Assembly (NCBI RefSeq): GCF_001194135.2
Contig: NC_068981.1
Span: forward strand, 117,733,562 to 117,781,028
Length of the DNA stretch: 47,467 nucleotides
DNA from: Octopus bimaculoides
Taxonomy: Eukaryota
Direction of reading: 5' to 3'
Numbering within the stretch: position 1 is the stretch's first letter; each line of letters begins with the position of its first letter. The position numbers were made by a program, and so were the translations under genes. This document shows positions 4,258 to 7,311 of this stretch, piece after piece. The notes under the pieces are model-generated. The model was not told the DNA's origin. It saw only the letters and a program-made list of their open reading frames with translations, and did no database searches.

Positions 4258-7174
4258 AATAATAACGGTAGGATTATGCTGCCCTCCTTCGGGTTTCATC
4301 CAGAACTCAATGGTAAATTGTTGCCTTGGAATCATAGATTTTGACATTCCATATTTTTTTTTTAACTTTAGTTGCAAAAGCTGTCTGTTTCCAGAGAAGT
4401 ACGCTGCATTTCCGAAACCATATCCAGGAAATAGTGAAGCTGTAGATGACGATTGTCTGACATCTCGTGCGTACCGAACTCGTATGCCTCTGGATGAGTG
4501 CATCGGTTCTATATATTGTTTTGGATGATGAATAAGATTTTTCAATCCTCCTGTGTGCTTTGGATATCGGCCATGATTCCCGCAGGGTTTATTCTTTTTC
4601 TTGGGTGTCCTATGATGCGGATAGTTTCCTTCTGAATCTTGGAGTCGTTGTCTTTCAATAAAATATTTTGGAACCCCGCTGTCTTGTTCACTATAAAATT
4701 CGCCTTCTTTGTGTTCTTCCTCTTCATAATGATAATCTGGAAGGTATTGCAGAAAGAATGATTTCATAAGTCTGTTATATCGTTCTTCTTCCTTGTATTG
4801 TGCATAATCAATCCAGTATGTACTTGTGTCATTCATATCCTTATGTCTAGGCTTATGCATGTCATGATCGTATTTGTTGTAAAAAATATTTTCATTACCC
4901 TGGTAAAATCCAGTTTCATTATGCGAATAAAAATTCTTATTCAAGCTGTTGTCGTAAAACGTTGCGTTTTCCTTAAATCTGCATTCTGTTCTCGAGTTTA
5001 TTCTGAAAGAATTGTTTCTGTGAGTATTTTCATAGTTTTGTTTAGTTATTTGGTCAGTGAAATATATATCTTTAAATCTAAAATATTTCATTCTCTCGGA
5101 AATCCCGTAATATTTTTGACTATGTTTACTTTCAGTAGCACTTCTCGGAACCCTTGATTCTCTAAATTTTCCAAAATGTCTCTCCTGTACATCATCACCG
5201 GCATTACTCTTATCACAGCTGTTGCATATAACATTACGCGTGCCACCAACTTTCACTTCCTTTGAAGAAATAGCCACAGAATGGACCAAGTTTCCATCGT
5301 TCCATTTTTCAGTGTGATTATTTTTATTTCCATTTGACATTGTCCAAAACTGGTTACTTTCCACAAGTAATCCTTCTTTATGACTTTCTCTATTTTGAAA
5401 ACAGATTTTCAGAATTGTGTTATTTGAATTTCTCAATATTTTAGTTTCAACATCAAGATAATCATTCGAATCTTTGACTCTCACAAGATAACTTCCAAAA
5501 CTTATCACTTTTCTGATGTCGTTTGTTTTATTCCAGTGAGTGTACTTTTTATGAAATGCTTGTGATTGCTTATTATTCCTGTCATCAGAATTTGATGCAG
5601 ACTGTGTATGTGAAGTACTTTCGTGTTCCAATTTCCCGTCATTTCTTAATTTCTTGTGATTGTGATGTAAAGAAACAATGGATCGGTCTATCATAAGTAA
5701 TTGGATTATTTTAATTTTGTCTTTACAATCAATCCAATGTCCATAACCAGGATTTCTTAAAGGAGTAGTTTTTGTAACGAAATATTTCTTCGAGGATACT
5801 TTGTGGTATTTTATATTCAACACATGATCATCAACCACATCTTGATATTCTATGTAATGTAATCCACGCATTCTTTGTAATTGCTTTTGGGTCGGCCATG
5901 TTTTTAAACATTGTTGCAATAACGGAAAAGTAATATTTTTCGACTCATTGAATGTTCGCGTCGTGTTACAAGTTATATCATTGGTCCATCCATGCAATAG
6001 TTTTTTGACGATTATTGTGTTTCCTTGATGACTTTCTGAGCGATCTACTAATGCTACATGTTTCGTTTCACGTATTCGCCCCCAGCAGTCAACAGTCTTC
6101 CACTTATACAATTGAGATGACTCTGAGTTTTTTAATCCAGTTTTCTTAGATATTTCTAGTAAATTCTTAATGCCTCTCCAGTGAGTCTTTGCTGTATATT
6201 TCTCGTTATCAAGGAATCCATCTCCATCTAACTGTGATTCTCGTTTCATTTTCCCATCTTCCATCAATACCGAATTTAGTGTCTTACGAATCGACATTTT
6301 TGTGGACGCCAGGTAAGAATTTCTTGTCCGAACTTCATTTTTGGACAATATTTTCTCCGTCATACGACAGTAATCGGAACATATTTTGGACTTAAACTTT
6401 CCACTCTCCTTAATTTCTTTCCTGTCAATAAATTCATTAAAGAAAGTTGACAGTTTAAAACATGTATCCCTCTTTGTAACATTGTAGTTGCACTTGAAAG
6501 AACTTTTAACAATATAATTCCAATTCCATTTAATAGAAGTTGCTTTGAGAAAGATAACAGTAATATTAGAAACGTTAGCATGAGAATTGGTAATCTTATT
6601 CTCATCATCATCATCATTCTTTCCAGTAGTAGTGGTGGTGGTGGTGGTGGTGGTGGTGGTGGTAGCGGCAGCAACAATAGTAGCGCTAATATGATCGGTA
6701 GTGGGACATGTCGCACCAGTTACCGGTGTAGAAGTACAGGTGAGACCCGCTTTTTTCGGTAAATTAATGCCAGCAAACGATATTGTCTCACTAGGATTAC
6801 ATGTAACAGTAGTAATAATAACGTTACCAGTTCCTGCAGGGATAAAAGTAGACTTTTCAGTAGTAAAAGTTGTAGTAGTATTTTTTTTAGTATTGGTAGT
6901 AGCTGCAGTAGTGGTGGTGGTGGCGGTGGTGGAGATGATAGTAGTAGTAGTAGTAGCTGTTGTTTTTGTAGCAGTTTTCTTTTCAACACCTGTAGCATCA
7001 ACGACAAGAACAGCATCAATAGTAATAATAGTTGTAGTAGTCGCACTGGTAGCGATAGTAGGTGAAGAAGTTGTAATAGAAGTATAGGTATTAGTATTAT
7101 TAGTGGTAGTATTGGTTGCAGCAGTAGCACCAGCAGTTTTTGTTGTCGTTGGTATAGTAGTGGTAGTAGTAGTC

Positions 7175-7208
<34 letters not shown>

Positions 7209-7311
7209 TAGTAGTAGAGTGTAGTAAAGTTGACGTCGGTAGAACAGGTACTCTGATGACGGCCGCTGACGTCGTCACCGCCACCACAGCTACTATTGCC
7301 AAGAAACACAT
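4257..7311 (-). CDS. PAPPA: Pappalysin-family (PAPP-A/PAPP-A2-like) metalloprotease, first (or first visible) coding exon: signal peptide + very long pro-region + start of LamG-like domain
   Basis: The 1020-aa ORF 4249..7311 ends ...NAAYFSGNRQLLQL...[25 protein letters not shown]. This matches the human PAPP-A mature N-terminus as recalled (ALYFSGRGEQLRL...PRDAFTLQVWLRAEGGQRSPAVITG). The true ATG at 7311 starts hydrophobic MCFLAIVAVVAVTTSAA and has G at -3. Furin-type RYAR lies at 4476-4465. The ORF runs into a canonical donor G|GTGAGT (exon ends 4257, intron starts 4256), so the ORF stop at 4251-4249 is intronic. PAPPA vs PAPPA2 cannot be resolved; the symbol denotes the family. Confidence 0.85.

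What the first reader, a model, noticed from the sequence alone, without database searches (positions are those of the whole stretch)
4465..7260. Giant ~930-aa pro-region in front of the pappalysin mature domain, encoded in one 3-kb exon
Seen: about 930 aa lie between the signal peptide (aa 1-~17) and RYAR (aa 949), with no stop or frameshift over 3 kb in a repeat-ridden genome. Established: the human PAPP-A propeptide is ~60 aa and PAPP-A2 ~210 aa. The extension has three parts: a Thr-rich mucin-like stalk (aa ~30-225), a Cys/Trp-containing unique region with many N-x-S/T sequons (aa ~250-720), and a Tyr/His/acidic segment. Inference: this is a lineage-specific, heavily glycosylated pro-domain. 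It may be a secreted protein in its own right after furin cleavage, a latency/tethering module, or an extracellular-matrix or egg-coat component. No such pappalysin architecture is known to me.
Basis: partly seen in the sequence, partly recalled or inferred. Interest (0 to 1): 0.7.

Follow-up and report, generated by a model that had tools for sequence, protein, structure and literature searches.

The report
Giant fast-evolving propeptide on a pappalysin
The first coding exon of a pappalysin (PAPP-A-like) protease gene really does encode about 930 extra residues ahead of the mature enzyme, some ten times the usual propeptide length; two other species carry the same oversized architecture, but most of it looks like a weakly constrained, structure-poor spacer inserted in front of the normal short propeptide.

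Summary
On the minus strand, 7311-4257 is one uninterrupted 1,019-codon reading frame ending at a G|GTGAGT donor. Its last ~48 aa are the start of the pappalysin laminin-G domain (PAPP-A2 8sl1, E=3.6e-6). The non-repetitive part (aa 237-949) has 0 stops, against 31-80 in the other five frames.

Public data hold two unannotated relatives with the same architecture: 1,189- and 1,204-aa exon-1 ORFs with the same donor position. In 79 other animal exon-1 ORFs the YFSG motif sits at median residue 91 (range 59-213); here it sits at 970.

Only the last ~111 aa are alignable between the window and those relatives. That stretch holds a KPCGNHGR motif, an R-x-R-x-x-R|DVR site homologous to the widespread RHPR|D site, and the LamG start. 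The body has no Pfam or PDB match and no confident AF2 fold. Between the two relatives it evolves at dN/dS ≈ 0.50, against 0.12 for the LamG start.

Best reading: a lineage-specific insertion of about 880 aa (a Thr-rich tract encoded partly by trinucleotide-repeat runs, then a polar body) lies between the signal peptide and the ancestral short propeptide. It is probably removed by a furin-type convertase.

The claim of many sequons is not above what the composition predicts. Glycosylation, cleavage, any independent function, expression and the taxon are all untested. This is a new variant of a known kind, of moderate interest.

The parts
4257..7311 (-). Coding part of the first coding exon of a pappalysin-type gene (1,018 codons plus the first base of a split Gly codon)
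   Evidence: ORF. Longest stop-free run in the window by a factor of 5. Contiguous sequence with no N gap inside.
7255..7311 (-). ATG (G at -3) and hydrophobic N-terminus MCFLAIVAVVAVTTSAAVI: candidate signal peptide, or possibly a signal anchor
   Evidence: Sequence. There is no in-frame Met in the 128 open codons upstream. The relatives also begin with Met plus a hydrophobic segment once their upstream ATG is used. No signal-peptide predictor was run.
6604..7224 (-). Thr-rich, mucin-like tract (aa 30-236: T 42.5%, A 13%, P 3.4%), containing near-pure (ACT)n and (ACC)n codon runs
   Evidence: Composition. Trinucleotide arrays at 7155-7226 and 6632-6663. Codon runs ACT x8, ACC x10 and GCT x5.
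4603..6603 (-). Unique polar body of the pro-region (aa 237-903: K 11%, N 9%, S 8%). Its C-terminal part (aa ~721-903, window 4603-5151) is Tyr/His/acid-rich. No known domain.
   Evidence: 0 stops against 31-80 in the other frames. No Pfam hit and no PDB hit. No homologue among 1.84 billion representatives. No internal repeat and no other copy in the window. AF2 mean pLDDT 29.8. hhalign against the relatives' pro-region gives probability 0.2%.
4465..4602 (-). Conserved propeptide core (aa 904-949): KPCGNHGR (4567-4590), then H.GG...L..H, then RVRYAR (4465-4482), the candidate convertase site R949|D950 (or R952|Q953)
   Evidence: 55% identity to P0001 and P0002 over aa 908-1018. Invariant columns. 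RYAR aligns with the RHPR|D, RYPR|DV and RVPR sites of other animals.
4258..4464 (-). N-terminus of the mature enzyme and first strands of the laminin-G-like domain (DVRQ...AAYFSG...[25 protein letters not shown])
   Evidence: phmmer against PDB: PAPP-A2 8sl1 E=3.6e-6, and PAPP-A 8hgg, 7y5n and 7ufg.
4251..4256 (-). Splice donor GTGAGT (phase 1, after the first base of the Gly codon)
   Evidence: Sequence. Donors at the same position in L001 (G|GTAAGT) and L002 (G|GTGAGT). In 91 of 95 exon-1 ORFs the eighth residue after EGGQ is Gly, and the next residue is R, K or E in 64 of 95, which is compatible with GTRAG read-through.
7312..7695 (-). Low-complexity stretch upstream of the ATG, of uncertain status: 5'UTR, or coding sequence hidden by an assembly error. 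It is open in the main frame (His/Gln-rich) and Thr-rich in another frame. It ends at the 544-nt N gap.

Best explanation
Window 7311-4257 (minus strand) is the first coding exon of an invertebrate pappalysin (PAPP-A-like, MEROPS M43B) gene.

The encoded precursor reads, in order:
- a hydrophobic N-terminal signal sequence;
- a Thr-rich, mucin-like tract of about 200 aa, grown at least partly by trinucleotide-repeat expansion;
- a polar body of about 670 aa that is poor in recognisable structure;
- the ancestral short pappalysin propeptide core of about 45 aa, carrying one conserved Cys in KPCGNHGR and the basic site R-V-R-Y-A-R|D-V-R;
- the laminin-G domain of the mature enzyme.

The giant part is therefore a lineage-specific insertion between the signal peptide and the ordinary propeptide.

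Inferred mechanism: a furin-type proprotein convertase cuts at R949|D950 (or at R952), about 20 residues before YFSG, as in human PAPP-A. This removes the whole ~930-aa pro-region.

The insert must stay in frame, because any stop or frameshift in it would abolish the protease encoded downstream in the same exon. Beyond that, it is under only weak protein-level constraint on composition and hydrophilicity rather than on sequence. That fits a disordered, probably O-glycosylated spacer rather than a folded functional domain.

Shown: the ORF, its pappalysin identity, its size relative to other animals, its presence in two more species, the conserved core, and weak purifying selection in the relatives. 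Inferred: secretion, cleavage, glycosylation and disorder.
For: **Real and coding.** There are 0 stops in 713 non-repetitive codons, against 31-80 in the other frames and ~58 in shuffles.

**Pappalysin identity.** The last ~48 aa match PAPP-A2 and PAPP-A structures. Reciprocal hits are named pappalysin-1 or PAPP1.

**Same architecture elsewhere.**
- P0001 is 1,189 aa, on a 142-kb ENA contig. P0002 is 1,204 aa, on a Logan contig.
- Both match only through their C-terminal ~111 aa, at 55% identity.
- Both end at the same donor position, and both have an upstream ATG followed by a hydrophobic segment.

**Selection in the relatives.**
- P0001 and P0002 are colinear at 42% identity, with 29 gaps in their protein alignment and both reading frames intact.
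- NG86 dN/dS is 0.50 (bootstrap 0.42-0.59). The same aligned bases read in the wrong frames give 0.81. The LamG start gives 0.115.
- Third codon positions are the least conserved: 57%, against 66% and 68%.

**Size is exceptional.** YFSG lies at residue 970 here and at 1140 and 1155 in the relatives, against a median of 91 (range 59-213) in 79 other exon-1 ORFs.

**Conserved core and site.** The KPCGNHGR motif and R..R|DVR are conserved. RYAR aligns with RHPR|D and RYPR|DV of many invertebrates and with RVPR of vertebrates. Mature human PAPP-A starts at residue 82 and YFSG lies at about 98.

**No fold or domain.** There is no Pfam or PDB hit. AF2 mean pLDDT is 29.8 and 29.2. Most 60-aa windows after aa 300 fall on the disordered side of a charge-hydropathy plot.

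**Matching composition.** The window's body and the relatives' bodies have closely similar composition despite showing no alignable similarity.
Against: - There is no transcript or proteomic evidence. The exon structure, start codon and cleavage are all inferred.
- No downstream pappalysin exon lies in the window or within 10 kb in L001. Family assignment therefore rests on ~48-110 aa plus the conserved donor.
- The cleavage site is only a minimal R-x-x-R. P2 is Ala or Pro in two of the three species.
- The window's N-terminal hydrophobic segment has no basic n-region and is followed by Arg, so a signal anchor is possible.
- The 5' end abuts low-complexity sequence and an assembly gap, with a Thr-rich alternative frame upstream.
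- dN/dS could be measured only between the two relatives, not for the window's own sequence. At dS ≈ 0.85 and 42% identity, alignment bias can lower it.
- Low pLDDT from alignments of 1-2 sequences does not prove disorder.
- Homology of the insert body between the window and the relatives is not demonstrable, so independent expansions cannot be excluded.
Confidence: 0.62

Rival explanations
1. The region is not removed. It stays on the enzyme as an N-terminal glycosylated stalk, or the hydrophobic N-terminus acts as an uncleaved signal anchor. Either would tether the protease to a membrane or matrix until a cut at the basic site releases it.
For: The N-terminal h-region is 17-18 uncharged residues followed by Arg, with no basic n-region. 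A Thr-rich tract right after it resembles the juxtamembrane stalks of type II proteins, which is a comparison from my own knowledge. The basic site is only a minimal R-x-x-R.
Against: The relatives have a more ordinary n-region, MYSNSK, before their hydrophobic segment. The basic site is conserved in position with the maturation site of pappalysins that have short propeptides.
Confidence: 0.15
2. The pro-region is a functional product in its own right: a secreted mucin-like glycoprotein, a matrix or egg-coat component, or a chaperone or latency domain that needs its full length.
For: dN/dS is 0.50, below 1 and below the wrong-frame control of 0.81. Length and composition are retained in three species.
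Against: There is no domain, no repeat, no confident fold and no alignable similarity between lineages. Sequons are at chance level. ORF maintenance is already explained by the protease lying downstream in the same exon.
Confidence: 0.12
3. Much of the ORF is not translated. Either the true start or acceptor lies near the conserved core, or in-frame segments are spliced out.
For: No RNA data are available. The Thr-rich part is open in two frames simply because of its repeat composition. The 5' end is uncertain.
Against: The 713 non-repetitive codons have no stop. Two other species keep 3.6-kb ORFs, with only whole-codon gaps in their alignment and a codon-position substitution pattern. No internal Met is followed by a hydrophobic signal-like segment.
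Confidence: 0.07
4. It is an assembly artefact, a pseudogene, or a transposon ORF fused by chance.
For: The assembly is gap-ridden, with 15 N runs. A mariner remnant lies elsewhere in the window.
Against: There is no gap inside 4252-7695. There is no second copy in the window and no transposon domain. An independent long-read contig and a Logan contig show the same architecture.
Confidence: 0.03

Closest known systems
Human PAPP-A and PAPP-A2 prepro regions (pappalysin-1 and -2, MEROPS M43B)
   Same: A signal peptide and propeptide end in a basic site about 15-20 residues before the YFSG...FT.E.W.KPEGGQ.NP start of the laminin-G domain.
   Different: The human prepro regions are 81 and 234 aa (PMC11925022). 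Here the length is about 949 aa, and 1,119-1,134+ aa in the two relatives. The extra sequence has no counterpart in other animals.
Short exon-1 ORFs of other invertebrate pappalysins (e.g. Branchiostoma belcheri KAI8487500.1, Mactra antiquata)
   Same: They share the LamG start, the apparent intron position, and an RHPR|D-type site. Many also have a single Cys upstream of that site.
   Different: Their pre-YFSG length is 59-213 aa. They have no Thr-rich tract and no long polar body.
Cysteine-switch pro-segment of unicellular pappalysins (mirolysin R21-T22-C23-G24; ulilysin Cys-Gly)
   Same: K908-P909-C910-G911 has the same [K/R]-x-C-G pattern. In mirolysin the basic residue fills the Lys/Arg-specific S1' pocket and the Cys binds the zinc (PMC6949598). 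The distance from the Cys to the maturation site is comparable: 39 aa here against 31 aa.
   Different: In mirolysin the 34-aa segment directly precedes the catalytic domain. Here a laminin-G domain would lie between them. Other animal pappalysins have the Cys but mostly not the Gly or the basic residue. No structural or biochemical test was possible.
Mucin-type PTS domains encoded in large single exons
   Same: The tract has very high Thr content, lies in one large exon, and is encoded by expandable repeat DNA.
   Different: Pro is only 3.4%. There are no longer-period tandem repeat units, and the tract is only about 200 aa. O-glycosylation is untested.

Membership tests
Animal pappalysins (PAPP-A/PAPP-A2/invPAPP-A, M43B) | N-terminal laminin-G-like domain beginning with the YFSG...FT.E.W.KPEGGQ.NP segment | tested here: met
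   PAPP-A2 8sl1 E=3.6e-6, and several PAPP-A entries. Only the first ~48 aa of the domain lie in the window.
Animal pappalysins (PAPP-A/PAPP-A2/invPAPP-A, M43B) | Metzincin catalytic domain with HExxHxxGxxH and a Met-turn | not testable with these tools
   The downstream exons are not in the window nor within 10 kb of L001.
Animal pappalysins (PAPP-A/PAPP-A2/invPAPP-A, M43B) | LNR modules, five SCR/CCP modules and a C domain | not testable with these tools
   These lie outside the window. The domain list is taken from PMC11925022.
Animal pappalysins (PAPP-A/PAPP-A2/invPAPP-A, M43B) | First coding exon ends just after ...NP.VI.G (phase-1 donor) | tested here: met
   G|GTGAGT in the window. The same position is used in L001 and L002. 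In 91 of 95 exon-1 ORFs from other animals the eighth residue after EGGQ is Gly, and the next residue is R, K or E in 64 of 95, which is compatible with donor read-through.
Convertase-processed propeptide | Basic R-x-x-R or R-x-[KR]-R motif at the pro/mature boundary, conserved among orthologues | tested here: met
   The sites are RVRYAR|DVR (window), RHRFPR|DVR (P0001) and RHRR|DVR (P0002). They align with RHPR|D and RVPR in other animals.
Convertase-processed propeptide | Actual cleavage and removal in the secretory pathway | not testable with these tools
   This needs expression with and without a convertase inhibitor, followed by N-terminal sequencing.
Mucin-like (PTS) domain | Ser plus Thr above about 40% over 100 or more aa | tested here: met
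   Aa 30-236 has T 42.5% and S 5.3%.
Mucin-like (PTS) domain | Pro-rich composition and tandem peptide repeats | tested here: not met
   Pro is 3.4%. TRF finds only period-3 arrays.
Mucin-like (PTS) domain | Dense O-glycosylation | not testable with these tools
   This needs glycoproteomics or lectin blots.
Cysteine-switch zymogen (mirolysin/ulilysin type) | Cys-Gly dipeptide in the pro-segment, with a basic residue two positions before the Cys | tested here: met
   KPCG is invariant in the window, P0001 and P0002. The reference motif R21-T22-C23-G24 is from PMC6949598.
Cysteine-switch zymogen (mirolysin/ulilysin type) | Cys thiol coordinates the catalytic zinc, and the pro-form is latent | not testable with these tools
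Cysteine-switch zymogen (mirolysin/ulilysin type) | Short pro-segment (under 50 aa) directly upstream of the catalytic domain | tested here: not met
   A laminin-G domain follows the site. The pro-region is about 930 aa.

The most novel reading that the evidence does not exclude
The invariant K-P-C-G-N-H-G-R motif, about 39 aa before the maturation site, may be a mirolysin-type cysteine switch: Lys in the S1' pocket and Cys on the zinc.

If so, this animal pappalysin is secreted as a true latent zymogen, which has not been shown for any metazoan pappalysin. The single conserved propeptide Cys seen in many animal pappalysins, including the vertebrate GAC[AG]TR, would by extension be a remnant of the same mechanism.

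The giant glycosylated insert would then control where and when that latency is released.
Probability: 0.15. Interest if true: 0.6.

Novelty: new variant of a known kind. Interest (0 to 1): 0.4.

Why it matters
Pappalysins are studied almost entirely as mature enzymes. The 2025 survey of invertebrate PAPP-A searched and compared only mature regions (PMC11925022).

A tenfold-expanded propeptide, retained in at least three species yet diverged beyond alignment between lineages, has two uses:
- It is a clean natural example of how repeat-driven insertions can balloon inside a removable protein segment, held open only by the essential domain downstream.
- It exposes, by contrast, the ~45-aa core that is conserved (a Cys motif plus a basic site). 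That gives a concrete, testable handle on whether animal pappalysins have zymogen latency.

It also matters for annotation. Gene predictors may truncate or split such an exon.

Tried and rejected
**Searches that found nothing for the pro-region**
- Pfam on the whole ORF and on both relatives gave nothing. The only hit was a sub-threshold DMRT-like match in P0002, taken as noise.
- PDB sequence searches with the body and with the relatives' profile returned only the LamG start.
- The word-indexed protein search with aa 240-1018 found nothing. This index is lossy: it also missed P0001 and P0002. The exhaustive HMMER search was what found them.
- The exact-product look-up of the ORF found nothing on record.
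- Two metagenome scans found no relatives.
- The literature search for the sample accessions found nothing, so the species of L001 and L002 remain unknown.
- No paper links pappalysins with cephalopods.

**Comparisons that came back negative**
- Profile-profile comparison of the window's body with the relatives' pro-region gave probability 0.2%, so no homology claim is made.
- Self-BLAST and window-wide BLAST found no internal repeats and no second copy.
No exon 2 is within reach.

**Structure and other scans**
- AF2 on the window's aa 237-1018 and on P0001 with P0002 gave pLDDT of about 29-30. I did not run fold search, because matches to such models would be meaningless.
- The bacterial promoter/terminator scan upstream was at chance level and is irrelevant to a eukaryotic gene.
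- Rfam and tRNA scans found nothing.

**Ideas rejected**
- Egg-coat or ECM component: no supporting domain.
- Sequon enrichment: p=0.12.
- Transposon origin: no transposon domain in the ORF and no second copy in the window.
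Full report
**What is there**

On the minus strand an ORF runs from ATG 7311 to a stop at 4249-4251 (1,020 aa). It ends in ...NPTVII-G followed by GTGAGT. The coding exon therefore ends at 4257 with a phase-1 donor, and the last two ORF residues are intron read-through.

The stop-free run is 1,148 codons long (4252-7695). 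It is bounded upstream only by a 544-nt N gap. The next longest run in any frame of the window is 218 codons.

The non-repetitive part, aa 237-949, has no stop. The other five frames have 31-80 stops, and shuffles give a mean of 57.6 with a minimum of 38.

The Thr-rich first fifth (aa 30-236, 42.5% Thr) contains near-pure ACT and ACC codon arrays. Such sequence is open in two frames regardless, so its coding status rests on context rather than on openness.

**Identity**

The last ~48 aa (AAYFSG...[25 protein letters not shown]) match the start of the laminin-G domain of PAPP-A2 (8sl1, E=3.6e-6) and of PAPP-A (8hgg, 7y5n, 7ufg and others).

A profile of this region retrieves 70 short ORFs from many animals. 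Several are named pappalysin-1 or PAPP1, for example from Lates and Polypterus. No other pappalysin exon lies in the remaining 4.2 kb, which is microsatellites and gaps.

Family membership thus rests on the exon-1 end and the conserved donor position. The catalytic, LNR and SCR parts are outside the window.

**Relatives**

The word-indexed search found nothing. The exhaustive HMMER search of 1.84 billion representatives found 18 hits, all confined to query residues 665-779, which are ORF aa 904-1018.

Two of these hits are long. P0001 (1,189 aa) and P0002 (1,204 aa) match through their extreme C-termini at 55% identity. Neither carries any annotation.
- P0001 lies on a 142-kb ENA contig, fetched as L001.
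- P0002 lies on a 4.2-kb Logan contig, fetched as L002.

Both ORFs end at G|GTAAGT or G|GTGAGT at the same codon position as in the window. Both have an in-frame ATG 12-23 codons upstream of the called start, giving MYSNSKLNCLAHVAMTIMIAITS... and MYSHLKIHILAH-MAMTIMI... That is a Met followed by a hydrophobic segment, then a Ser/Thr-rich region.

The other 16 hits, and the 70 hits, are 97-267 aa long. Across 79 of these ORFs the YFSG motif lies at median residue 91 (range 59-213). It lies at residue 970 in the window and at 1140 and 1155 in P0001 and P0002.

The literature gives human prepro lengths of 81 aa (PAPP-A) and 234 aa (PAPP-A2), and about 80 aa for amphioxus (PMC11925022). The giant pro-region is therefore exceptional, but it is shared by at least three species.

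**How it evolves**

P0001 and P0002 are colinear over their full length at 42% identity, with 29 gaps in their protein alignment and both reading frames intact.
- NG86 dN/dS for their pro-regions is 0.50 (bootstrap 0.42-0.59).
- The same aligned nucleotides read in the wrong frames give 0.81.
- The LamG start gives 0.115.
- Third codon positions are the least conserved: 57%, against 66% and 68%.

The region is thus translated and weakly constrained in those species.

Between the window and these relatives, nothing upstream of aa ~904 is alignable (hhalign probability 0.2%). Even so, the composition of the bodies is nearly the same: K about 11%, S 8-11%, N 7-10%, E, D and R 5-8% each.

No Pfam or PDB match exists for any of the three pro-regions. 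There are no internal repeats and no second copy in the window. AF2 gives mean pLDDT of 29.8 and 29.2. That is uninformative on its own, but it is consistent with the charge-hydropathy profile.

N-x-S/T sequons are at the frequency expected from composition in all three: 13 against 9.4±2.7 in the window's body, p=0.12.

**The conserved core**

The last ~45 aa of the pro-region are conserved among the three species: KPCGNHGR[HY]..H.GG...L..H......R.R..R|DVR.

In a wider alignment the window's R-Y-A-R|D lines up with the RHPR|D, RYPR|DV and RVPR site present in most animal exon-1 ORFs. Many of those ORFs also carry a single Cys upstream of that site.

The spacing from the site to YFSG is 20 aa here. 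In human PAPP-A the mature N-terminus is at residue 82 and YFSG at about 98, a spacing of about 16-17 aa.

Hence the giant region is best described as an insertion between the signal sequence and the ordinary short propeptide.

K908-P909-C910-G911 has the same pattern as mirolysin's R21-T22-C23-G24. There Arg fills the Lys/Arg-specific S1' pocket and Cys ligates the zinc (PMC6949598). This is a lead, not a test. In animal pappalysins a laminin-G domain separates the propeptide from the catalytic domain.

**Most likely mechanism**

The most likely mechanism is a secreted precursor whose ~930-aa pro-region is removed by a furin-type convertase at R949 (or R952).

The insert stays open because any stop would be a null allele of the protease encoded downstream in the same exon. 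It is otherwise free to drift and to expand by repeat slippage, under constraint on hydrophilic composition only.

Rivals:
- a retained stalk or signal anchor;
- partial non-translation;
- an artefact.

The evidence weighs against the last two. It cannot decide between the first two and the favoured model without experiments.

**Limits**
- The 5' boundary is uncertain. The frame stays open to the gap without a Met, and a different frame upstream reads Thr-rich text that stops at 7293-7295. Either the ACN repeat spills into the 5'UTR, or an assembly indel hides more coding sequence.
- No expression data were available.
- The databases reached here contain few eukaryotic gene models, so an existing annotation of this exon in a cephalopod or mollusc genome cannot be excluded.

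**Verdict**

This is a new variant of a known kind: a pappalysin with a tenfold-expanded, fast-evolving propeptide. Interest is moderate.

Noticed in passing
window 7293-7695 (minus strand): Upstream of the ATG the main frame stays open, His/Gln-rich and without a Met, up to the 544-nt N gap. A different frame reads mucin-like Thr-rich text and stops at 7293-7295. Either the ACN microsatellite continues into the 5'UTR, or an assembly indel hides more coding sequence.
   Followed up: partly
window 29041-30008 (+): Mos1/mariner-type transposase remnant, split into two ORFs: HTH_48 (E=1e-22) and Transposase_1 (E=6e-18).
   Followed up: yes
whole window: There are 15 N gaps and very dense (CA)n, (TA)n, (TTCT)n and trinucleotide microsatellites. 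No tRNA gene and no Rfam family was found. No other long ORF is present, so the roughly 39 kb beyond the gap upstream of the gene (8240-47467) appears gene-poor.
   Followed up: partly
L001 9484-10000 and L002 1-460: The 5' flank of the two relatives is 77% identical, more than the coding pro-region (about 64%). Both have a polypyrimidine tract plus AG about 60-100 nt before the ATG. This may be a conserved 5'UTR or promoter, or the acceptor of a 5'UTR intron.
   Followed up: partly
exon-1 ORFs P0003-P0097 (other animals): Vertebrate PAPP-A propeptides share ECG[TA] just after the signal peptide and GAC[AG]TRLPRGKR about 40 aa before YFSG. Many invertebrate ones have a single Cys 15-25 aa before RHPR|D. 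A conserved unpaired propeptide Cys may be a general pappalysin feature.
   Followed up: partly
window 4798-5157 (+), 6701-7087 (+), 6360-6716 (-), 6720-7130 (-): ORFs of 118-136 aa overlap the main ORF on both strands. Three of the four (6701-7087, 6360-6716, 6720-7130) overlap the Thr-rich repeat tract and have low-complexity Val-, Leu- or Pro-rich translations, so they are by-products of its composition. The fourth (4798-5157, +) lies in the polar body and was not examined further. None was tested as a gene.
   Followed up: no
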